The notes below the pieces were generated by a model. It did no database searches. It worked only from the letters and a program-made list of their open reading frames with translations, and was not told where the DNA came from. DNA of 64,000 nt, taken from the IMG/VR virus record IMGVR_UViG_3300032315_001715, positions 248,001 to 312,000 of that record; one strand, given 5' to 3'. The translations under genes and the position numbers were made by a program. Below, one piece after another: positions 33,261-40,692 of this stretch (position 1 is the stretch's first letter; the number at the start of each line of letters is the position of its first letter).

Positions 33261-34088
33261 TTAAGGAAGTGATGCATAGATGTGCTGTTGCAACTGCAAA
33301 GTGAACCCATGTCTCATGGCCAGCAGTGCTGCATATTCATGATTGCCCTGATTGCTACTTTGATCCAAGAGACCCGGTGTCCAGAATGAAATTCTTTCAT
33401 CAACCTCGCTGCGCATCTCCAAGCTGGCGTTGTTGCCCACCTTTTCCGGCGCACGGTTGTAGATGTTCATGGGACTCACGTAAACGCTGCGTGGACCCTT
33501 TTGCCGACGGAATTCATACGCAAACTCCGGAACATCGTGATGATTGCTAGCAGCGTCTGAGCTCACCACGAACTTCAGCACGTTTGCCCGTGCAAACACG
33601 TCGGGTCGGATGTCACCATAGCGATTGGTGGTTTCGTTGGCCTTTGGACTCACCACCAGGGTGGTTTCTGCGGGCAACGGACGAAGGAAGTCGCCATTGC
33701 TTTCGATCTGTGTGCGGAAACCCTGTGCGTGCAGGAATTCTAGGAAACTGGTTAGATTCTTTTGCAGCATGGGCTCTCCGCCGGAGACCACGATCAGCAA
33801 CCGATCCATGAAGCTTTCACGCACGATCCCGTTGCTTGCCACTTCCTTGTCCACCGCACCGTGGATCTTGGCCAGCACCTGGTCAAAGGTCAACACGTCG
33901 CCGCTATCGAACCAAGTGTCGCAGAACGTGCAAGCACGATTGCACTTGCTAAAACGAACAAACACCGCCGGCTCGCCGCTGAACGGCCCCTCGCCTTGCA
34001 GGGTTGCAAATACTGACGTTACCATCAGTTCATTCTCGGCCATGTTCTTGAAAAACGTGGGCGAGACTATTTCATTTTTACCAAACAT
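33261..34088 (-). CDS. queE: 7-carboxy-7-deazaguanine synthase (radical SAM)
   Basis: TLQGEGPFSG.PAVFVR..CNRACTFCDT (CxxxCxxC), SGGEPMLQ, IESNG, VVSPK, LQLQQH. Confidence 0.9.
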   Translation of the reverse strand: MFGKNEIVSPTFFKNMAENELMVTSVFATLQGEGPFSGEPAVFVRFSKCNRACTFCDTWFDSGDVLTFDQVLAKIHGAVDKEVASNGIVRESFMDRLLIVVSGGEPMLQKNLTSFLEFLHAQGFRTQIESNGDFLRPLPAETTLVVSPKANETTNRYGDIRPDVFARANVLKFVVSSDAASNHHDVPEFAYEFRRQKGPRSVYVSPMNIYNRAPEKVGNNASLEMRSEVDERISFWTPGLLDQSSNQGNHEYAALLAMRHGFTLQLQQHIYASLP

Positions 34089-34969: not shown

Positions 34970-35129
34970 TGACCTTGCGTGCAACCACCGCATCATCTCG
35001 TATTTCCCAGGTGATTTCATCACCTTCGGTCCATCCAAGATCATTTAGCATCGTCGGATCAAAAACAAGGATGATCTCACCATCTTCTTCGGCTACCTTT
35101 GCGGTATAGGTTTTTGGTTCAATGTTCAT
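34959..35129 (-). CDS. AbrB/MazE-like DNA-binding protein
   Basis: V.EEDGEIIL.F...MLNDLGW.EGD.I.WEI pattern. Confidence 0.55.
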   Translation of the reverse strand: MNIEPKTYTAKVAEEDGEIILVFDPTMLNDLGWTEGDEITWEIRDDAVVARKVNDH

Positions 35130-35629
35130 GAAAATAAATCCTCGTTCCATTCGCGATGTCCTTCGCGATACGCCATGTTTGACACGGTTTCTCGTACTTC
35201 AACGCGGAAGCACCAAAGTCGTGCAGCTTCGCCTGGACCCCATATTTCCGGTACATAAACACCATTGACATACTTATAAAGCATATCTGCCAGGCCTTCG
35301 CAGCCTAGACGAGGTAGAATCGTCAGCTTAGCCATCTTTTTTCTTTCCAGCATCTTGAACGTTTCAAGTTCCGGATCGTCGGCGGATACCAGTAGAGTAT
35401 GGTCAAATTGATCCTCAAGGATCTTCTTGAGTTCCTTGAGTCCGCCATAATCTGCTACCCAGTTTCTAACATCTAGATCATTGGTGCCAAAATAAAACTT
35501 CATCGAAAATGCATAACCGTGAATCATATTGCAATGACTGTCGGCACGCCATTGCCGATATGCACAGGGGAACGAATTGTGATATTCTTTAGTCGAAACG
35601 TATTTGTATGTGGTTGGTTCAGTTGTCAT
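35126..35629 (-). CDS. queD: 6-carboxy-5,6,7,8-tetrahydropterin synthase
   Basis: SHCNMIHGY (CxxxHG), WVADYG.LK..K..L..FDHT, GCEGLA, VEVRET. Confidence 0.85.
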   Translation of the reverse strand: MTTEPTTYKYVSTKEYHNSFPCAYRQWRADSHCNMIHGYAFSMKFYFGTNDLDVRNWVADYGGLKELKKILEDQFDHTLLVSADDPELETFKMLERKKMAKLTILPRLGCEGLADMLYKYVNGVYVPEIWGPGEAARLWCFRVEVRETVSNMAYREGHREWNEDLFS

Positions 35630-35786
35630 TGTTAAGATTTCCTTGCAGATATCCAAATGTAAACAGATCTTGCATCATACTATTGGATACGATAGAAGTC
35701 CATGACTGGTCTCCATTTTGCTGGAAAACGATATTGGCCTGCTTACCAGCATCATTGACAATTGGTATCTTAATTACTCGTGTCAT
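35619..35786 (-). CDS. Small hypothetical protein
   Basis: AGGAG RBS before MTRVIK. Confidence 0.45.
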   Translation of the reverse strand: MTRVIKIPIVNDAGKQANIVFQQNGDQSWTSIVSNSMMQDLFTFGYLQGNLNNDN

Positions 35787-35886
35787 CTCTTGTCTCCTGT
35801 TGAGCGATGTTTGATGACTGTGCAGAATGTTTAAAGTGGGTTGAGACAGTCCATAGTCCACTTGGATAGTATTTACGGAACCTCCG

Positions 35887-36339
35887 TCAAATGAAAATAT
35901 TCAATTCGTGTATTTTGTGAGCAGTGTTGTTTCTTATTTGATCAGCAACCATGTCAACTGTTTTGATCAACTCGTGGTCTTCGATAGCATAGCATTCTTG
36001 TTGATTCTGATTCATCGCCATCCTAGATTTACTGAGAAGATTTTTTGATATTTCCTCAGCGTCAGATGTAGCATCATTGGTATCAAGTATGATCTCAGCA
36101 TAAATTCTAAAATCTATGCCAGGTTGGTTTCGTCCCCGCATCAGCGCTGTTGCAAACTTACCTCGACCTATCTTGAGAGGTCCACGTGCTTCTTTGTTAC
36201 TTTCGTGATCGACAACATGCGCTCTTCCAAAGTAAAGAAGATATCTTTCCTTGCCAGGTTTTTCTATATCCCCGGATCGCAGCCCTTCGTTGATGATACG
36301 ATTGCTGCGATATTCTTGGTAGCCAATTCCTTTGGTCAT
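35887..36339 (-). CDS. Hypothetical protein, possibly GIY-YIG/T5orf172-like
   Basis: YLLYF..LKIGR..R..E..QECY spacing; weak. Confidence 0.4.
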   Translation of the reverse strand: MTKGIGYQEYRSNRIINEGLRSGDIEKPGKERYLLYFGRAHVVDHESNKEARGPLKIGRGKFATALMRGRNQPGIDFRIYAEIILDTNDATSDAEEISKNLLSKSRMAMNQNQQECYAIEDHELIKTVDMVADQIRNNTAHKIHELNIFI

Positions 36340-36346
36340 AGAGTCA

Positions 36347-36418
36347 TCACTTCATTCTAGCAACGATGTTGAAGAATTCTTGCTTGAGATGCGGATCTTC
36401 TCGAAACTTACCGCGCAT
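36347..36418 (-). pseudogene. folE: Displaced original 3' end of folE
   Basis: MRGKFREDPHLKQEFFNIVARMK*, 18/23 identical to the current folE end MRGVFREDPSLKQEFFNIVSKMP*. Confidence 0.85.
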
Positions 36419-36429
36419 GCCCAACGCAT

Positions 36430-37284
36430 TCATATTTTTCGTCCTTTTATTGTTCTTCCTCGAATATAACCAGTTGGAGTGGGTTCGTCTATTTTGCAAA
36501 GTAAATTCTTTCCAGTATCTTGATTTGTGAACCATACATGAGTTACCGGTCTACCTTTGATAAAATTAGGAGGCGGGTTTGACTTTTTAGGTATTTGCTT
36601 TTGTTCACCGGTAATCGGATTGTAAAACCATGAAGATGCACATCTATGTGGGTTTCCATGCTTCCAGCCATTTGGAATCATTTCACCGTCTTTAATCAAC
36701 CTACATTCATTAGTAAATGGATTATGCACCCACCTACGTCCCCTATTGAAATCATTGCTTAATCTTACATGCTTAGACGGATCATACTCTAAAGCATGTA
36801 TCATTTGGTGTAGTCCTAGATTTGAATCCAGCACGTGAATTCGACCTCTCAACGGAGATCCTTGGTACTTACGATTTTTATTATTCTGCGATCTTCCATA
36901 CCAAAATCCTGGTATTAACGGTTTATTACTTGCTATCATGGTATCTATAACACCATTTGTGATCCAAGAAAGTGATGGTGCATTTTCAAATACCGAATTA
37001 CATTGATTTAAAAATAACGGATTGATACGAGCATTGACCCGATTGAGAACTGAAATTTCGTATGATTTGGCATCGTCGGCAGTATTAAATATCCGTCTAA
37101 TTTTTGGTTCAAATGAATTGTGACCATATGCCTTTATCAAGGTTCGAACTAACTTTGACGATGTAAAATATCGAATCCATAGATCTTTTGAAATTGTTTC
37201 ATCGGTAAGATGTTTTGCGTATCTGCATCCAATATACCATTGTCCGGTAATCTTAAATCGAAGACTATAAACATACGCAACCAT
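36430..37284 (-). mobile_element. Free-standing GIY-YIG homing endonuclease with repeated C-terminal DNA-binding modules
   Basis: AYVYSL....GQWYIG.R, YFTSSK, E..VL, repeated W.TNG/WVHNP/WFYNP/WFTN..P.GW/F..GR units; TAAATA at 37307-37312 and GAGG RBS. Confidence 0.85.
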
Positions 37285-37335
37285 GAGAACCTCATACCTT
37301 TTAAGGTATTTAGTTCTCATGTCGCTTATCCAGTT

Positions 37336-38007
37336 TTATGGCATCTTAGACACTATGTTGAAAAATTCCTGCTTTAGGCTAGGATCTTCCCTAAACACGC
37401 CTCTCATGACAGATGTGGTCATCGCAGAATCGTGCTCCATAACACCGCGCATGGTCATGCACATGTGCTCAGCTTGTACCAATACTGCAATTCCTTCAGC
37501 TTCTGTTGCTTCCACTATTGCATCGGCAATCTGTACGGACATTTCTTCTTGGATCTGTGGCCGGGCTGAAATCCAATGTACCAAACGGTTAAACTTGCTG
37601 AGCCCGATCACGTTCTTTCCTGGAAAGACTCCGATGTAGCACTTGCCTCTGATACCCTGGAAATGGTGAGCACAGGTGCTGCGTATGCTGATCGGACCGG
37701 TAACATACACCTCATCATATTGATTGGCGTTAGGAAACGCGGTGATCTTTGGCTTTGGTAGGTAGCGGCCGGCAAATGTTTCTAGAACAAACATCTTTGC
37801 CACACGCCTTGCTGTGTCGTGGGTGTTGTGATCGTTGTCCGTGTCAATCACGAGGCTTTCGAGCACGCCCTGCATCTTTCCGGTAACCTCATCGATCAGG
37901 GCATCAAAATCAATGTCCCCAACCGCTTCGCTGATGTTGTCATTGCAGTAAAACCTGCTATCGCTTTCCTTGAGCCGATTACGGATCGTTTCGCTAGGTG
38001 TTGTCAT
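37336..38007 (-). CDS. folE: GTP cyclohydrolase I
   Basis: DTARRVAKM, STCAHHF, GLSKFNRLV..RPQIQE, AEHMCMTMRGV. Confidence 0.95.
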   Translation of the reverse strand: MTTPSETIRNRLKESDSRFYCNDNISEAVGDIDFDALIDEVTGKMQGVLESLVIDTDNDHNTHDTARRVAKMFVLETFAGRYLPKPKITAFPNANQYDEVYVTGPISIRSTCAHHFQGIRGKCYIGVFPGKNVIGLSKFNRLVHWISARPQIQEEMSVQIADAIVEATEAEGIAVLVQAEHMCMTMRGVMEHDSAMTTSVMRGVFREDPSLKQEFFNIVSKMP

Positions 38008-38067
38008 GTTGGTATCCTTTCTATAGGGAGTATAGCTAAAAGCGTGCTGGTAAGCACAAGATCTTTC

Positions 38068-38535
38068 CTAGACGGTTCCGTTTGCACCAGGGACTCGCAT
38101 TGGCTTGCTGTTCGGATATGACGTACTAATGGATGTCATCGTTGCAATGCTTGCCCCGATTGCCCCGGTTGCCCCGGTTGCTCCGATGGTCAACGGTGTG
38201 TAACCACCTGAAGCGCCGCCACCCGTCCATGTGATGGTCGTTGGAGCTAGAGCAATGCTGGCCATTGTCATGGAGTCCGTAAGGGTATCTACCCATAAGC
38301 TCGATGATAGATCAGATACATCATTCTTTAGCTTGGCCTCCACGGGATCCATTCCGGTTTCGACCATCACCGTGATGATCTTTCGCATGCCGTCAAGTTC
38401 TTTCTGCACGGCATGTGCTTTGGCCGTTAGCTCATCCATGGAAGCACGCACGGTTTTCATTTGCCGTGAAATGTCATCCAAGTCCTGTCGTGTTTGCCGA
38501 TATTCTTTAAAGTAGTCTAAAATTGCGTCATTCAT
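38068..38535 (-). CDS. Hypothetical protein (coiled coil plus low-complexity GAT tail)
   Basis: GGAGG RBS; GATGATGAIGA repeat. Confidence 0.55.
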   Translation of the reverse strand: MNDAILDYFKEYRQTRQDLDDISRQMKTVRASMDELTAKAHAVQKELDGMRKIITVMVETGMDPVEAKLKNDVSDLSSSLWVDTLTDSMTMASIALAPTTITWTGGGASGGYTPLTIGATGATGAIGASIATMTSISTSYPNSKPMRVPGANGTV

Positions 38536-39062
38536 AGTGGCGTATCCTCCGAGTATTTTCTCCATGGTGTAAAGACTTTTCGATCCTGTAACGTATGGAG
38601 ATCGTGGCACCAAACACCGGGATTGGTAGCATTGAAATCTTTGTCGTCGATCTTCAATGTGGCATTATAGCCAAGCAATCCAATGTAGGGTATTTTTACC
38701 GAGATCTGTGGAATGAAATTGGTCTTTTCACTGTATCCACCTTCGCACACCCAATCGACGTGCTTGACATCAAAATCAAGGGTCACCATGCAACCAAGAT
38801 CAAGCACGTCGTTGATCATCTTGTCCCAGCTTGCACTTTCAAGACTGGTACCGTCATGCCAATTTCCTGGATTGAAACTTTGATTAGCACCGAGATAGAT
38901 ATGATCACATCCAGATGCTGTAACATGATCTTTGATCGAACCGATATCGTGGATACCGACAACGAATAGTGTTTTCATTGCATATGCCGGTGTATGTTCA
39001 ACCTCAATGCCGGTGAAAAATTCCACGTCATTTCTAATACCAGTATCATATTCACGCTTCAT
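38532..39062 (-). CDS. Conserved hypothetical protein coupled to dpdA
   Basis: FFTGIEVEHTPA..MKTLFVVG, HIY.GAN.SF, LKIDD.DF.ATNPGVWCH; start overlaps the dpdA stop region. Confidence 0.75.
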   Translation of the reverse strand: MKREYDTGIRNDVEFFTGIEVEHTPAYAMKTLFVVGIHDIGSIKDHVTASGCDHIYLGANQSFNPGNWHDGTSLESASWDKMINDVLDLGCMVTLDFDVKHVDWVCEGGYSEKTNFIPQISVKIPYIGLLGYNATLKIDDKDFNATNPGVWCHDLHTLQDRKVFTPWRKYSEDTPL

Positions 39063-40692
39063 CAAAATCCTCCATTTCCATGCTGACGTTGTTATCGGCA
39101 TCCATCCCGGTAATATTACGCAGAAGCTTCTCATGCTTGTTGATGAGATCCATTGGACGCTCCGATGTTAGTATTTCTGGACACAAATCCTTAAACTCAA
39201 GAAGATCGGGAGTAACATGGTTATTCGCTTCTAACAGCGGTTGGTCTTGCCATCGGCAAGCATCCTGTATGGCCCGTATATGCAGCTCAACATTATGATG
39301 CATTGCGATCAAATACGAGAATCCATCCATCGAGCTGGGCCATTTAACCTGGTACTTTTCGTATTCCTTATCAAACGATCCTCCAAAATCAAATAGACCC
39401 CCGTTACCTCGATCGTGTGCGAGGTACTCCTTGTATGCGTCCGTCCATCGAAACTTGTCACCGCATCGACCTTCCGGAGTGGAGGGATACCAATCACTTT
39501 CAATTTCCTTCTTGGAGAATGGTATTTTCTTGTAATCCAAATCGTCGTATCCTCGAACACAGATATCGCCAACCGTGCAACGGCGGCCTATTTCCGTGGG
39601 CATGATCACACCCTTGCGATCATTTGCAATGACCCAATCATTGATCAGCATTTGGCTGTTCTTTAGGGACTTGTCATCCACGATTGAACCGCCCTTGAAA
39701 CGCATGTTGCGATGGCTGTTTTCATATCCATAATACATCTGACCCTTGGCTGTCATCACGAACGGCGATGCTGCATCAAAGCTCAGGGTGATGTTTGGAT
39801 TAATGAACTGCCTGATGTTTCTTTGCAGCGTGGTTAGTGCGCAACCGGCCTTGATCTTGCCATTACCTAGATAATGCAGCCAATCCCTGCCATCAAGATA
39901 TTTGCCGTCTCGCATGATGATCAACCTACGCAGATTGATGGCAAAGTTCGAAGCTTGCACGTTGGAGAATGCCCAGGTTTCAAACGGAAGGTCCTTGACC
40001 GCATCCCACCAAATGTCGCCTTCGGCTTCGTTTCTTCCCTGCAACACGTTGAGGAATTTGGTAGCACCTTCCTTGCGATGCTTGATGAAAAAATCGTAGT
40101 TTTCAAGCGACACGTTCAAACAGTCCCTGAAGGTCTTCATACCAGGATGCAGGCTTTCCCCGGTTACCGGATCGAATCCAAACTTAACCAGACCGTATGT
40201 AGGGACATCGAGCACCATGGAATAATCCGCGGTGTGTTCGAGCCACCGAAGGATTTTCATGCGCATCTTATCCTTGTCCTGCTCCCAGTCCTGATCTGTT
40301 TGCTTGCCTTTTTTGGTCCACGGCCATTTCAACACACCCGTGGCAATTTGGAATCCGCCCGAGTCTCCTAATATAACCGTGTTGGATCTATCCCTCTTTT
40401 GCACCATGCTTTCATAAATGTCACTGTCTGCTGGATCAAGATACGCATGACCAGCTGAGTAAAGTGCCGCCGGATAATACATCAGGCTGTTCTTTTGGTT
40501 TAAAAAGTCCAAATCAATGCGATCGTTATTAAGTCCGTCTGGTAACCGGTCTCGAACGGTGTATTCAGGCATGCTGACGATCTTGGCATAGATCGCACTG
40601 ATGCTTGGAAGGAATACGGCATAGTCCTTTTGTGACTCGGCTAAGTTCAACGCTTGTGGATGCAAGTCTAGTTGTTTGGAAAATAAATTCAT
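39052..40692 (-). CDS. dpdA: DNA 7-deazaguanine transglycosylase (TGT-like, DpdA2 type)
   Basis: LGDSGGFQ, MVLDVP, NVLQG, WLHYLG, SFDAASP TGT-fold motifs within a folE/queD/queE neighbourhood. Confidence 0.85.
   Translation of the reverse strand: MNLFSKQLDLHPQALNLAESQKDYAVFLPSISAIYAKIVSMPEYTVRDRLPDGLNNDRIDLDFLNQKNSLMYYPAALYSAGHAYLDPADSDIYESMVQKRDRSNTVILGDSGGFQIATGVLKWPWTKKGKQTDQDWEQDKDKMRMKILRWLEHTADYSMVLDVPTYGLVKFGFDPVTGESLHPGMKTFRDCLNVSLENYDFFIKHRKEGATKFLNVLQGRNEAEGDIWWDAVKDLPFETWAFSNVQASNFAINLRRLIIMRDGKYLDGRDWLHYLGNGKIKAGCALTTLQRNIRQFINPNITLSFDAASPFVMTAKGQMYYGYENSHRNMRFKGGSIVDDKSLKNSQMLINDWVIANDRKGVIMPTEIGRRCTVGDICVRGYDDLDYKKIPFSKKEIESDWYPSTPEGRCGDKFRWTDAYKEYLAHDRGNGGLFDFGGSFDKEYEKYQVKWPSSMDGFSYLIAMHHNVELHIRAIQDACRWQDQPLLEANNHVTPDLLEFKDLCPEILTSERPMDLINKHEKLLRNITGMDADNNVSMEMEDFDEA

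What the first reader, a model, noticed from the sequence alone, without database searches (positions are those of the whole stretch)
36347..37407. Homing endonuclease that replaced the 3' end of folE and left the old end behind
Seen: folE ends MRGVFREDPSLKQEFFNIVSKMP* (37336-37407, codons AGA/AGG/CTA/TTT/ATA). After the GIY-YIG gene comes an orphan MRGKFREDPHLKQEFFNIVARMK* (36347-36418, codons CGC/CTC/AAG/TTC/ATC like the rest of the genome), 18/23 aa identical. Knowledge: gene-end replacement by endonuclease elements is described in fungal mitochondria. Inference: the element inserted inside folE while carrying a recoded, cleavage-resistant 3' end, so it parasitises an essential modification gene without an intron or intein.
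Basis: partly seen in the sequence, partly recalled or inferred. Interest (0 to 1): 0.62.

Follow-up and report, generated by a model that had tools for sequence, protein, structure and literature searches.

The report
Homing endonuclease cassette replacing folE's end
A selfish endonuclease gene sits inside the last part of a giant phage's GTP cyclohydrolase gene, brings a substitute gene end so the enzyme stays whole, and leaves the original end stranded behind it; the same layout is known from fungal mitochondria, but I found no description of it in phages.

Summary

**Layout.** In this 452.8-kb phage, all on the minus strand:
- folE (37336-38007) is complete.
- A 51-nt spacer follows.
- A SegE-like GIY-YIG endonuclease gene follows (true start 37284, end 36430).
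- Its TGA overlaps the ATG of an 87-nt orphan copy of folE codons 196-223 (36347-36433).

**Endonuclease-free relatives.** Close relatives (folE up to 95% identical) run folE directly into queD. Their last 23 residues equal the orphan exactly, not the working end.

**Other carriers.** Eight further metagenomic alleles carry the same cassette at the same codon. Each has the same marks: Ala195, an end in ..MP*, a conserved hairpin and an ATGA overlap.

**Mobility.** A 96%-identical endonuclease core lies in a different folE lineage with unlike flanks, so the core moves horizontally. The endonuclease is under purifying selection (omega 0.14-0.22).

**What did not hold.**
- The true junction is Met196, 15 nt upstream of the one proposed.
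- Cleavage resistance is untested.

**Wider pattern.** A second, unrelated GIY-YIG family does the same to the nrdB tail in this genome and in at least five other lineages.

**Verdict.** This is a new variant of a known kind: intronless homing by gene-end replacement.

The parts
37336..38007 (-). folE (GTP cyclohydrolase I), 223 aa, complete and in frame. The 5' ~335 nt are about 97% identical to the endonuclease-free relative L195. Identity falls toward the endonuclease.
   Evidence: Pfam PF01227 7.6e-49, profile 5-178/179. NCBIfam FolE to position 217/219. Aligns to solved GTP cyclohydrolase I chains to within 4 residues of their end. Identity gradient.
37336..37425 (-). Replacement gene end: Ala195 plus codons 196-223 and the stop (...SKMP*). 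This haplotype is linked to the endonuclease.
   Evidence: Every allele shown or predicted to carry the endonuclease has Ser-Ala-Met at 194-196 and ends ..MP*. Endonuclease-free alleles have Ser-Asp-Met and end ..MK*. It differs from the ends of free relatives at 5-6 residues and 20-26 nt of 69.
37285..37335 (-). Conserved 51-nt spacer between the folE stop and the endonuclease start.
   Evidence: 96.7% identical to L188, and conserved across seven alleles whose endonucleases are only 64-95% identical.
37282..37321 (-). RNA hairpin that pairs the Shine-Dalgarno GAGG (37290-37293) and the AUG (37282-37284) of the endonuclease with an upstream arm.
   Evidence: Minimum free energy of the 66-nt stretch 37276-37341 that contains the hairpin -27.9 kcal/mol, z = -8.9, 0 of 200 shuffles as stable. 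The consensus fold is kept in 7 alleles with compensatory changes in the upper stem.
37307..37312 (-). TAAATA promoter-like motif inside the 5' half of the hairpin, 25 nt before the endonuclease ATG.
   Evidence: 97 of the 198 genome copies of TAAATA lie within 60 nt upstream of ORFs, against 7 expected. The modal distance to the start codon is 20-35 nt. Promoter function is inferred.
36430..37284 (-). Free-standing GIY-YIG homing endonuclease gene, 284 aa: an N-terminal GIY-YIG domain followed by four W-x-x-N...P-x-G-aromatic repeats.
   Evidence: Pfam SegE_GIY-YIG 27.4 bits (cut-off 25) and PHROG 314 'homing endonuclease' 1.3e-9. GC3 0.27 against genome 0.52. omega 0.14-0.22. All seven close homologs sit directly after a folE. 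Repeats read directly from the sequence.
36347..36433 (-). Orphan native folE end: 28 codons plus stop. The ATG overlaps the endonuclease stop. The 4-codon leader (36419-36430) has decayed. The 23-codon body (36350-36418) is intact.
   Evidence: The body is 23/23 aa identical to the ends of the endonuclease-free alleles P0011, P0014, P0021 and P0022, with 0-1 nonsynonymous against 8-10 synonymous codon differences. Same position and ATGA overlap in the carriers whose junction was read.
35126..35656 (-). queD, the right-hand neighbour. In endonuclease-free relatives it directly follows folE.
   Evidence: Pfam PTPS 5e-15 and NCBIfam QueD. Layouts of L195 and L197.

Best explanation
This is a free-standing GIY-YIG homing endonuclease cassette lodged inside the coding sequence of folE, between codons 195 and 196.

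**Parts of the cassette.**
- A substitute copy of the last 28 codons, so FolE stays full length.
- A 51-nt spacer. It carries a promoter-like TAAATA motif and a hairpin that hides the endonuclease's ribosome-binding site and AUG on read-through transcripts.
- The endonuclease ORF, which ends on the out-of-frame TGA inside the native ATGAC of codon 196.

**The orphan.** The phage's own last 28 codons are pushed downstream and remain as an untethered orphan.

**Proposed homing cycle (inferred).**
1. In a mixed infection the enzyme cuts endonuclease-free folE alleles near codons 194-200.
2. The left end of the break pairs with folE of the carrier genome.
3. The right end pairs with the orphan, which serves as the right-hand homology arm.
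4. Repair copies the substitute end, the spacer and the endonuclease into the recipient.
5. The recipient's own end thereby becomes the new orphan.

**Proposed protection and stability (inferred).**
- The carrier is protected because its intact folE junction differs at Ser194, Asp195Ala and Ser199, and the orphan junction lacks the left half of the site.
- The two repeats share too little exact sequence to recombine the cassette out easily.

**Shown:** the anatomy, the presence/absence polymorphism, the orphan matching the native allele, horizontal movement of the core, and selection on the endonuclease.
**Inferred:** the cut site, immunity, the promoter and hairpin timing, and the orphan's role as a homology arm.
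For: 1. **Identity of the parts.** folE, the GIY-YIG gene and the orphan are identified.
2. **Empty sites.** L195 and L197 have folE directly followed by queD. L196 and L198 have only the optional orf150 between them. Their ends equal the orphan.
3. **Fixed site.** All seven close homologs of the endonuclease (64-95% identity) lie directly after a folE. In each carrier whose DNA reaches the junction, the endonuclease stop overlaps the orphan's ATG. Those whose DNA reaches the folE end share the ..MP* end and the conserved spacer, and those that also reach codon 195 share Ala195.
4. **Horizontal movement.** Against L188 the core is 877/912 identical while the flanking repeat copies are 64/86 (Fisher p = 9e-11). 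Endonuclease dS is 0.105, while folE dS between lineages runs from 0.54 to saturated.
5. **Identity gradient.** Identity to the endonuclease-free L195 falls toward the insertion: 97% in the first 335 nt of folE, about 85% in the middle, about 65% in the new end. This is as expected for co-conversion.
6. **A maintained enzyme.** omega is 0.14-0.22. GIY, YIG, Arg, Glu and Asn motifs are readable.
7. **Fresh orphans.** Five distinct orphan bodies (six alleles with complete orphans) match the end of an extant free allele 23/23. L188's truncated orphan adds 15 matching codons. The 4-codon leader next to the core decays: 0/153 against 7/28 nonsynonymous, p = 1e-6. This places the usual right-hand crossover a few codons into the orphan.
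8. **Repeats too unlike to recombine.** They share only 54-71 of 87 nt, and the longest exact run is 8-14 nt.
9. **Regulation.** The hairpin and TAAATA layout mirrors the late-promoter and hairpin control of T4 I-TevI, segB and Aeh1 mobE (PMC2988022).
10. **A possible loss scar.** L201 is endonuclease-free but has carrier-type junction codons and a native ..MK* end. That is what excision by repeat recombination would leave.
11. **A second family.** An unrelated GIY-YIG family shows the same design at the nrdB tail.
Against: - No cleavage has been shown. The cut site and immunity are deduced only from which codons differ.
- The interior of the new end does not travel strictly with the core: 22/27 identical to L188, against 96% for the core.
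- In L194 the working end is DNA-identical over 45 nt to the native-type orphan of L188, while L194's own orphan is scrambled. So the polarity (new end foreign, orphan native) is not universal, and crossovers can fall on either side.
- Ala195 and Pro223 lie 84 nt apart yet are always together. Simple linkage to the core does not explain that. Selection for immunity or a structural compensation may be involved.
- Endonuclease and folE identities are roughly concordant among five carriers, so much of the history may be vertical.
- No RNA data exist for this phage.
- The host and the essentiality of folE are unknown.
Confidence: 0.8

Rival explanations
1. The orphan is not just a leftover. It is a translated 28-aa micro-ORF, coupled to the endonuclease by the ATGA stop-start overlap and kept by purifying selection for a function of its own. 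It would be a free FolE C-terminal helix peptide. This can coexist with the main explanation.
For: - The ORF is intact in six alleles with complete orphans, and the truncated L188 copy is intact as far as its contig reaches. Start and stop are kept.
- There are 0 nonsynonymous changes in 153 body codons against many synonymous ones.
- An AGGA/GAGG-like purine run lies 8-13 nt before the ATG in most alleles. It is weakest in L194, the one allele with a scrambled orphan.
- In the nrdB family the orphan tail is read in frame as the C-terminus of the element's own ORF.
Against: - Every orphan body equals the end of an extant endonuclease-free allele. Synonymous sites between clade members are saturated (dS above 1.7). 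So 'same residues, other codons' is what a recently captured native end looks like.
- The N-terminal leader decays freely.
- L194 has lost half of its orphan.
- The purine run is forced by the Lys/Arg/Gly-rich tail of the endonuclease.
- There are no expression data.
Confidence: 0.12
2. The polarity is reversed in this window. The working end is the phage's own, and the orphan came in with the endonuclease as a passenger from a previous host.
For: - L194's working end is identical in DNA to a native-type sequence, and its orphan is the decayed copy.
- The interior of the new end is less tightly linked to the core than expected.
Against: - The endonuclease-free alleles of this clade all end like the orphan: P0010 at 95% identity differs by one residue, and P0011 (91%), P0014 (88%), P0021 and P0022 (85%) are identical. 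None ends like the working end.
- Within the clade the ..VFR..S..SKMP haplotype is found only in folE alleles of the carrier type. The clade members whose downstream DNA was read (L002, L202, L203) all carry the endonuclease.
- DNA identity of free ends to the orphan is 59-63/72, against 45-52/72 to the working end.
Confidence: 0.05
3. The cassette is an ancient, now immobile resident. One old insertion was inherited vertically, and endonuclease-free alleles arose by repeated loss. The enzyme no longer homes and may be domesticated.
For: - Endonuclease and folE-body identities are roughly concordant among window, L002, L189, L191 and L192.
- L201 looks like a loss scar.
Against: - The window and L188 share a core with dS 0.105 in folE backgrounds whose repeat copies are only 73-81% identical.
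- The window's folE 5' third is about 97% identical to an endonuclease-free genome. This argues for recent gain or loss at the population level.
- omega of 0.14-0.22 shows the enzyme is maintained.
- Orphans would have decayed under long vertical descent.
Confidence: 0.08
4. The arrangement is a group I intron, an intein or an assembly artefact.
For: Endonuclease genes inside phage coding regions are usually carried by introns or inteins.
Against: - No Rfam family matches in 35000-39000 at E <= 1 other than two chance hits.
- folE reaches a stop after a full-length domain.
- The endonuclease is out of frame and has its own Shine-Dalgarno sequence.
- The same layout appears in a second assembler's contig and in eight alleles from other samples.
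Confidence: 0.02

Closest known systems
Free-standing seg and mob homing endonucleases of T4-like phages (intronless homing; SegE, SegF, SegG, MobE)
   Same: - GIY-YIG (SegE-like) enzyme with no intron.
- Presence/absence polymorphism between related phages.
- The target is a conserved gene next to the insertion.
- Co-conversion of flanks.
- An RBS-sequestering hairpin with a late-type promoter inside it (PMC2988022).
   Different: - The T4 cases are intergenic, or they split the host gene into two polypeptides (Aeh1 nrdA, T4 39/60, phage 25 gene 43).
- Here the gene stays in one piece because the element supplies a second copy of the last 28 codons, and the old copy is left behind.
- The review contains no mention of duplication.
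Gene-end duplications beside homing endonuclease ORFs in fungal mitochondria (atp6, cob)
   Same: A partial C-terminal copy of the host gene lies downstream of it, with GIY-YIG or LAGLIDADG ORFs between or around the two copies (PMC6279837).
   Different: - Different genetic system and different enzymes.
- In that paper the ORFs are mostly degenerate, and neither mobility nor empty sites are shown.
- Here carriers, empty sites, a probable scar allele, a maintained enzyme and a regulatory cassette are all seen in natural populations.
Vibrio phages phi-ST2 and phi-pp2 against KVP40: mob-like HNH endonuclease at the folE stop codon
   Same: - folE of a 7-deazaguanine gene cluster is the neighbour and probable target.
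- The last ~94 nt of folE are heavily recoded (71% identity), while DNA beyond the endonuclease is ~98% identical to KVP40.
   Different: - HNH family, on the opposite strand, inserted at the stop codon.
- Only about 7 nt of the old end are repeated, so there is no orphan gene end.
- This is the ordinary free-standing layout.
Integrating elements that carry a substitute 3' end of their target gene (for example lambdoid phage 21 and e14 in E. coli icd, and many tRNA-gene integrators). This is from my own knowledge and was not checked here.
   Same: Same design logic: the element lands inside a gene, restores it with its own diverged copy of the 3' end, and leaves the old end as a pseudo-copy at the far junction.
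   Different: - Those elements move by site-specific integrases at att sites in bacterial chromosomes.
- This one has no integrase and should move by double-strand-break repair between co-infecting phage genomes.

Membership tests
GIY-YIG nuclease superfamily (SegE-like) | N-terminal GIY-YIG catalytic domain with GIY, YIG, Arg, Glu and Asn motifs | tested here: met
   Pfam PF19835 at 27.4 bits, above the cut-off of 25, E = 4e-6. PHROG 314 'homing endonuclease' 1.3e-9. Residues YVY, YIG, R, E in YEISVL and N in LNQ read directly. NCBIfam gives no hit.
Homing endonuclease gene (functional definition) | Optional presence at one fixed site in otherwise homologous genomes | tested here: met
   Nine carrier alleles at the same codon, and four confirmed empty sites in close relatives.
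Homing endonuclease gene (functional definition) | Horizontal spread: element phylogeny discordant with host gene and flanks | tested here: met
   The core is 96% identical to L188 while both flanking repeat copies are 73-81% identical (p = 9e-11). Endonuclease dS is 0.105, against folE dS of 0.54 to saturated. This rests on one clear pair; the other carriers are roughly concordant.
Homing endonuclease gene (functional definition) | Site-specific cleavage of the empty allele and immunity of the occupied allele | not testable with these tools
   Only the codon differences at the junction are seen: Ser194 AGC to TCN, Asp195 to Ala, Ser199 AGC to TCN.
Group I intron-encoded endonuclease | ORF embedded in a self-splicing intron that interrupts the host gene | tested here: not met
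   No intron family in Rfam at E <= 1 over 35000-39000. folE is complete with its own stop.
Intein-associated endonuclease | In-frame insertion flanked by Hint splicing blocks | tested here: not met
   The endonuclease is a separate ORF after the folE stop codon, in another frame than the orphan. No Hint or intein domain was found in Pfam.
Gene-end-replacing endonuclease elements (fungal mitochondrial type) | Host gene intact through an element-linked C-terminal copy, with the displaced native C-terminal copy downstream of the endonuclease ORF | tested here: met
   Compared with PMC6279837. Kinship of the enzymes with the fungal ones was not tested.
T4-type hairpin and late-promoter control of endonuclease translation | Stable hairpin sequestering the RBS, with a late promoter placed so that late transcripts cannot form it | tested here: inconclusive
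   The hairpin is met: -27.9 kcal/mol, z = -8.9, covariation in the upper stem. The promoter rests only on enrichment of TAAATA upstream of ORFs and on its position. No transcript ends are known.

The most novel reading that the evidence does not exclude
Gene-end replacement may be a general, so far unlisted third way, beside introns and inteins, by which phage homing endonucleases colonise coding sequence. In this reading the displaced end is not junk. It is kept either as the element's built-in right homology arm or as a translated peptide. In the folE family it would be coupled through the ATGA overlap. In the nrdB family it is read in frame as the element protein's C-terminus, which would give that protein the NrdA-binding tail of NrdB. 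The orphan would then be under selection and could act on the target enzyme of competing, endonuclease-free phages.
Probability: 0.12. Interest if true: 0.85.

Novelty: new variant of a known kind. Interest (0 to 1): 0.62.

Why it matters
- **A third route into coding sequence.** It shows with natural alleles how a free-standing endonuclease can live inside an enzyme gene of a phage without splicing and without splitting the protein.
- **A complete natural series.** Empty sites, carriers in several lineages, a near-identical core in a foreign background, a probable excision scar and a decaying copy are all available. The homing cycle can therefore be tested directly.
- **A marker for target sites.** The 5' edge of an orphan gene end marks the insertion and probable cut site. 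Short gene-end duplications could be used to find endonuclease targets in metagenomes and to correct phage annotation.
- **A warning for population analyses.** Identical residues with different codons in a leftover fragment need not mean selection on the fragment.
- **Possible generality.** The second family at nrdB suggests the design is recurrent in large freshwater phages.

Tried and rejected
- **Phage GenBank search.** A near-identity search found nothing. A protein search gave only relatives below 53% identity.
- **Metagenome-contig scan with FolE.** It gave no allele closer than 73%. The close alleles came from the word-indexed protein search instead.
No difference between the two copies.
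- **Rfam.** No intron or other RNA family.
- **Annotation of neighbours.** orf150, orf80, the 181-aa and 200-aa ORFs and the 546-aa ORF upstream have no credible hit in Pfam, PHROGs, NCBIfam or PDB where each was searched. The 546-aa ORF has a DSGGFQ-like motif by eye, so a DpdA-like role is only a guess.
- **orf150 as part of the element.** Rejected: homologs lie at the same place in the endonuclease-free L196 and L198, and it is absent from the carrier L002.
- **Orphan under selection.** I first read the all-synonymous differences between the window and L002 orphans as selection on the orphan. I rejected this as the sole reading once free alleles with identical residues and saturated synonymous sites were seen.
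- **Sequencing runs.** No RNA run holds the locus. The laid contigs cannot show rare variants. The X5 contig that skips the endonuclease (joint 36388 to 37520) could not be fetched for inspection.
- **Asp195/Lys223 contact idea.** Not tested, because model coordinates are not returned by the fold tool.
- **Literature.** Seven searches found the fungal precedent, but no phage report of an endonuclease with a displaced gene end. The library is incomplete, so this is no proof of absence.
- One Pfam call was wasted on a too-short reference.
Full report
**Where the window lies.** It is bases 248001-312000 of a 452,799-base virus record that CheckV rates complete. Laid contigs and related loci come from lake and other freshwater metagenomes. 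All genes around the finding are on the minus strand. Read 5' to 3' they are:
- a 546-aa ORF (39052-40692);
- two small ORFs;
- folE (37336-38007);
- the endonuclease gene;
- the orphan;
- orf150 (35887-36339);
- an 80-aa ORF;
- queD (35126-35656);
- further on, a QueE-like radical-SAM gene (33261-34088).

So folE belongs to a 7-deazaguanine-type gene set. Whether it is essential to the phage is not known.

**Check of the observation.** A self-comparison of the whole genome lists the pair at E = 6e-7. FolE is full length:
- Pfam covers profile positions 5-178 of 179.
- NCBIfam FolE reaches position 217 of 219.
- The protein aligns with solved GTP cyclohydrolase I chains to within four residues of their C-terminus.

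The replaced stretch is therefore part of the fold, not a dispensable tail. The middle ORF matches SegE_GIY-YIG above Pfam's cut-off and a PHROG of homing endonucleases.

**The codon argument does not hold.** GC3 is 0.52 in both copies and in the genome. Only the endonuclease gene stands out, at 0.27 (GC profile).

**Exact anatomy.** Seven database homologs of the endonuclease are 283-285 aa and start at the Met that is residue 13 of the mechanical ORF. The upstream ATG at 37320 is followed by stop codons in three relatives, yet its DNA is conserved.

That DNA is the 5' arm of a hairpin (37282-37321). The hairpin pairs with the GAGG and the AUG of the endonuclease:
- free energy of the 66-nt stretch folded (37276-37341) -27.9 kcal/mol, z = -8.9;
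- none of 200 shuffles is as stable;
- the upper stem changes by compensatory pairs among seven alleles.

Inside the 5' half lies TAAATA (37307-37312). Genome-wide, 97 of its 198 copies fall in the 60 nt upstream of ORFs, where 7 are expected. Most lie 20-35 nt before the start; here the distance is 25 nt.

This is the layout described for T4 I-TevI, I-TevII, I-TevIII, segB and Aeh1 mobE. There, read-through transcripts fold and are silent, and transcripts from the late promoter inside the hairpin are translated (PMC2988022). For this phage that reading is an inference.

At the other end, the endonuclease ORF stops on a TGA that overlaps an ATG (36431-36433). That ATG is the Met196 codon of the displaced folE end. 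In L002, L191, L192, L202 and L203 the orphan still reads M-T-T-S-V/I and then M-R-G.... The duplication is therefore 28 codons plus stop (87 nt): 37336-37422 and 36347-36433.

The word-indexed protein search found many folE proteins closer than those on viral and metagenome contigs. They fall into two kinds.
- One kind has Ser-Asp-Met at 194-196 and ends ..MK*.
- The other has Ser-Ala-Met and ends ..MP*.

The window's nearest relatives are of the first kind: P0010 at 95%, P0011 at 91%, P0014 at 88%, and P0021 and P0022 at 85%. Four of these five end with exactly the 23 residues of the orphan. P0010 differs by one residue.

Their contigs show no endonuclease:
- L195 and L197 have folE, about 85 nt, then queD.
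- L196 and L198 have only a homolog of orf150 in between.

At the DNA level the last 72 nt of these alleles match the orphan at 59-63 positions and the working end at 45-52. Against them the orphan has 0-1 nonsynonymous and 8-10 synonymous codon differences. The working end has 5-6 nonsynonymous.

**The same cassette elsewhere.** All seven close homologs of the endonuclease (95% to 64% identical) lie directly after a folE of 222-224 aa. In L002, L188, L189, L191, L192/L193, L194, L202 and L203, as far as each contig reaches:
- the working folE ends ..(S/A)(K/R)MP*;
- the spacer and hairpin follow;
- the endonuclease stop overlaps the orphan's ATG;
- the orphan ends ..(A/S)RMK*.

L188 is cut short by its contig end. 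Only L194, which has the most divergent endonuclease, has a damaged orphan: the first half is scrambled and the last 15 codons are intact.

**Mobility.** L188 is a 998-nt Logan contig from a lake-water run of another study, also seen when that run was laid on the window. It compares with the window as follows:

| Segment | Identity to the window |
|---|---|
| Last folE codons plus spacer | 96.7% |
| Endonuclease | 96.1% |
| 27 nt of the working end before that block | 81% |
| Leader | 64% |
| Orphan body | 73% |

Core against flanks gives Fisher p = 9e-11. L188's orphan belongs to another folE lineage, the one with A-F-R-E-F-P-H-I-K. Its free members are only about 73% identical to the window's FolE. 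Endonuclease dS between the two is 0.105. folE dS is 0.54 even to the closest free relative and is saturated to the others. So a recently shared core sits in old, different backgrounds.

Identity between the window and the endonuclease-free L195 also falls toward the insertion:
- about 97% in the first 335 nt of folE;
- about 85% in the next 225 nt;
- about 65% in the new end;
- about 80% again in the first part of queD.

This is the pattern expected around a site of endonuclease-driven exchange. The enzyme is maintained, with omega 0.14-0.22 in five comparisons.

**What the orphan tells us.** Five distinct orphan bodies, from the six alleles with complete orphans, are each 23/23 identical to the end of some extant endonuclease-free allele:
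- the window, L002 and L202 with P0011 and its kin;
- L189 with P0023;
- L191 with P0025;
- L192 with P0098.

L188's truncated orphan adds 15 matching codons. The four leader codons beside the core have taken seven replacements in seven alleles, against none in 153 body codons (p = 1e-6).

I first took the all-synonymous differences between orphans as selection on the orphan. But members of one folE clade share the end's residues while their synonymous sites are saturated. A freshly captured native end looks exactly like this.

The simplest reading is this. At each homing event the right-hand joint forms a few codons into the orphan. The leader then stays with the element and drifts, while the body is the recipient's own end and is always young. 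This also points to a break near codons 194-200.

There the free alleles of the window's clade read Ser194 AGC (TCA in L198), Asp195 GAY and Ser199 AGC. Carriers read TCN, GCR (Ala) and TCN (AGT in L192/L193). These changes are candidates for immunity. They are not shown to be so.

**Points that do not fit a simple model.**
- The interior of the working end shares lineage-specific residues with the orphan of the same genome. L191 has 22 of 22, yet 12 codons differ synonymously. L189 and L192 share them in part.
- In L194 the working end is identical over 45 nt to L188's native-type orphan.

So crossovers also fall inside the working end, and the foreign-versus-native polarity is a matter of degree. 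In the window's own clade, however, the carrier haplotype (Val204, Ser210, Ser220, Lys221, Pro223, Ala195) is distinct from all free alleles.

Ala195 and Pro223 always occur together although 84 nt apart. I cannot say whether this reflects immunity, a structural compensation or sampling.

**Stability and loss.** In six genomes the two repeats share 54-71 of 87 nt and no exact run longer than 14 nt. This should hinder deletion of the cassette by repeat recombination. It may also be why only 'recoded' pairs are seen, which is survivorship rather than design (inference).

L201 is an endonuclease-free folE followed by queD. It has carrier-type junction codons (TCT, GCA, TCC) but a native ..SRMK* end. 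That is what such a deletion, or a partial conversion, would leave.

**A second family in the same genome.** The genome-wide search for short nearby duplicates also found, outside the window, nrdB (G000 117701-118834; Pfam Ribonuc_red_sm 4.5e-45). It is followed by a different GIY-YIG gene (116893-117660; LEM-3-like, 5.5e-8). Next comes a 144-aa ORF whose last 23 residues repeat the NrdB tail exactly, with about eleven nucleotide differences, all synonymous.

Relatives of that endonuclease in at least five further viral lineages show an nrdB tail, the endonuclease, and an in-frame orphan tail that co-varies with the working tail. These are L205, L206/207/209, L208 and L210, plus L110 with a shorter remnant. 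An accessory domain lies on either side of the endonuclease. I did not look for empty sites in this family.

**Comparison with what is known.**
- Free-standing seg and mob genes of T4-like phages are intergenic or split their host gene. The review has no mention of duplication.
- In KVP40-like vibriophages an HNH gene sits at the folE stop codon with a recoded 3' tract. Only about 7 nt of the old end are left.
- C-terminal duplications of atp6 and cob beside endonuclease ORFs are recorded in a fungal mitochondrial genome (PMC6279837).
- From my own knowledge, integrase-driven elements such as phage 21 or e14 in icd use the same trick.

Seven literature searches found no phage report of an endonuclease with a displaced gene end. 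The library is incomplete, so this is not proof of absence.

**Verdict.** The codon argument is rejected, the junction is moved to Met196, and cleavage and immunity are left open. I rate it a new variant of a known kind, with interest 0.62.

Noticed in passing
G000:C1:116505-119552 (outside the window; L105 2505-5552): Second gene-end replacement in the same genome. nrdB is followed by an unrelated GIY-YIG gene and then a 144-aa ORF ending in an exact, synonymously recoded copy of the 23-residue NrdB tail. An HNH gene lies just upstream of nrdB. The same design is seen in at least five other viral lineages; there the orphan tail is read in frame with the element's ORF.
   Followed up: partly
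window 35887-36339 (-): orf150 (no family hit, GC3 0.37) is an optional gene between the folE end and queD. It is present in the endonuclease-free L196 and L198, and absent from L195, L197 and the carrier L002. It is an independent indel, not part of the cassette.
   Followed up: partly
L201 264-935 (Logan contig): An endonuclease-free folE with carrier-type junction codons (Ser TCT, Ala195, Ser TCC) but a native ..MK* end, followed directly by queD. It is a candidate excision scar or naturally immune allele.
   Followed up: partly
whole genome G000; example window 37307-37312: TAAATA (often A/G-A/G-TAAATA) is about 14-fold enriched in the 60 nt upstream of ORFs, mostly 20-35 nt before the start codon. 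It is probably this phage's late-type promoter element.
   Followed up: partly
window 39052-40692 (-): A 546-aa ORF upstream of folE, conserved next to folE in relatives (89% in L002). It has no hit in Pfam, PHROGs, NCBIfam or PDB. It contains a DSGGFQ-like motif, so it may be a divergent DpdA/TGT-like transglycosylase.
   Followed up: partly
run X2, contig laid at window 37220-37344 with a joint to 36471: A lower-depth contig in a lake metagenome carries the endonuclease start region joined to its 3' end, skipping about 748 nt. It may be an internally deleted, degenerating copy of the endonuclease.
   Followed up: no
run X5, joint window 36388 to 37520: A contig from a freshwater metagenome skips the endonuclease and aligns to the orphan on one side and the folE body on the other. 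It is probably another empty-site allele. The contig itself could not be fetched.
   Followed up: no
L016, L017, L058 (folE 53% relatives): GIY-YIG genes about 35% identical to this endonuclease's N-terminal domain lie near folE on the opposite strand in more distant phages. folE neighbourhoods seem to attract such genes repeatedly.
   Followed up: no
L199 (Vibrio phage phi-ST2) 3078-3779 against L200 (KVP40): A mob-like HNH endonuclease is inserted at the folE stop codon on the opposite strand. The last ~94 nt of folE are only 71% identical to KVP40, while DNA beyond the insertion is ~98% identical. Only about 7 nt of the old end are repeated.
   Followed up: yes
G000:C1:394499-398950: The C-terminal 39 residues of a 238-aa ORF recur (56% identity) 1.7 kb downstream, beyond one of two tandem paralogous ~495-aa genes. 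It looks like a decayed tandem duplication with no endonuclease involved.
   Followed up: no
G000:C1:25472-27976: The first 69 residues of a 502-aa ORF recur (52% identity) 790 nt downstream of its end on the same strand. It may be a paralog or a 5'-end duplication.
   Followed up: no
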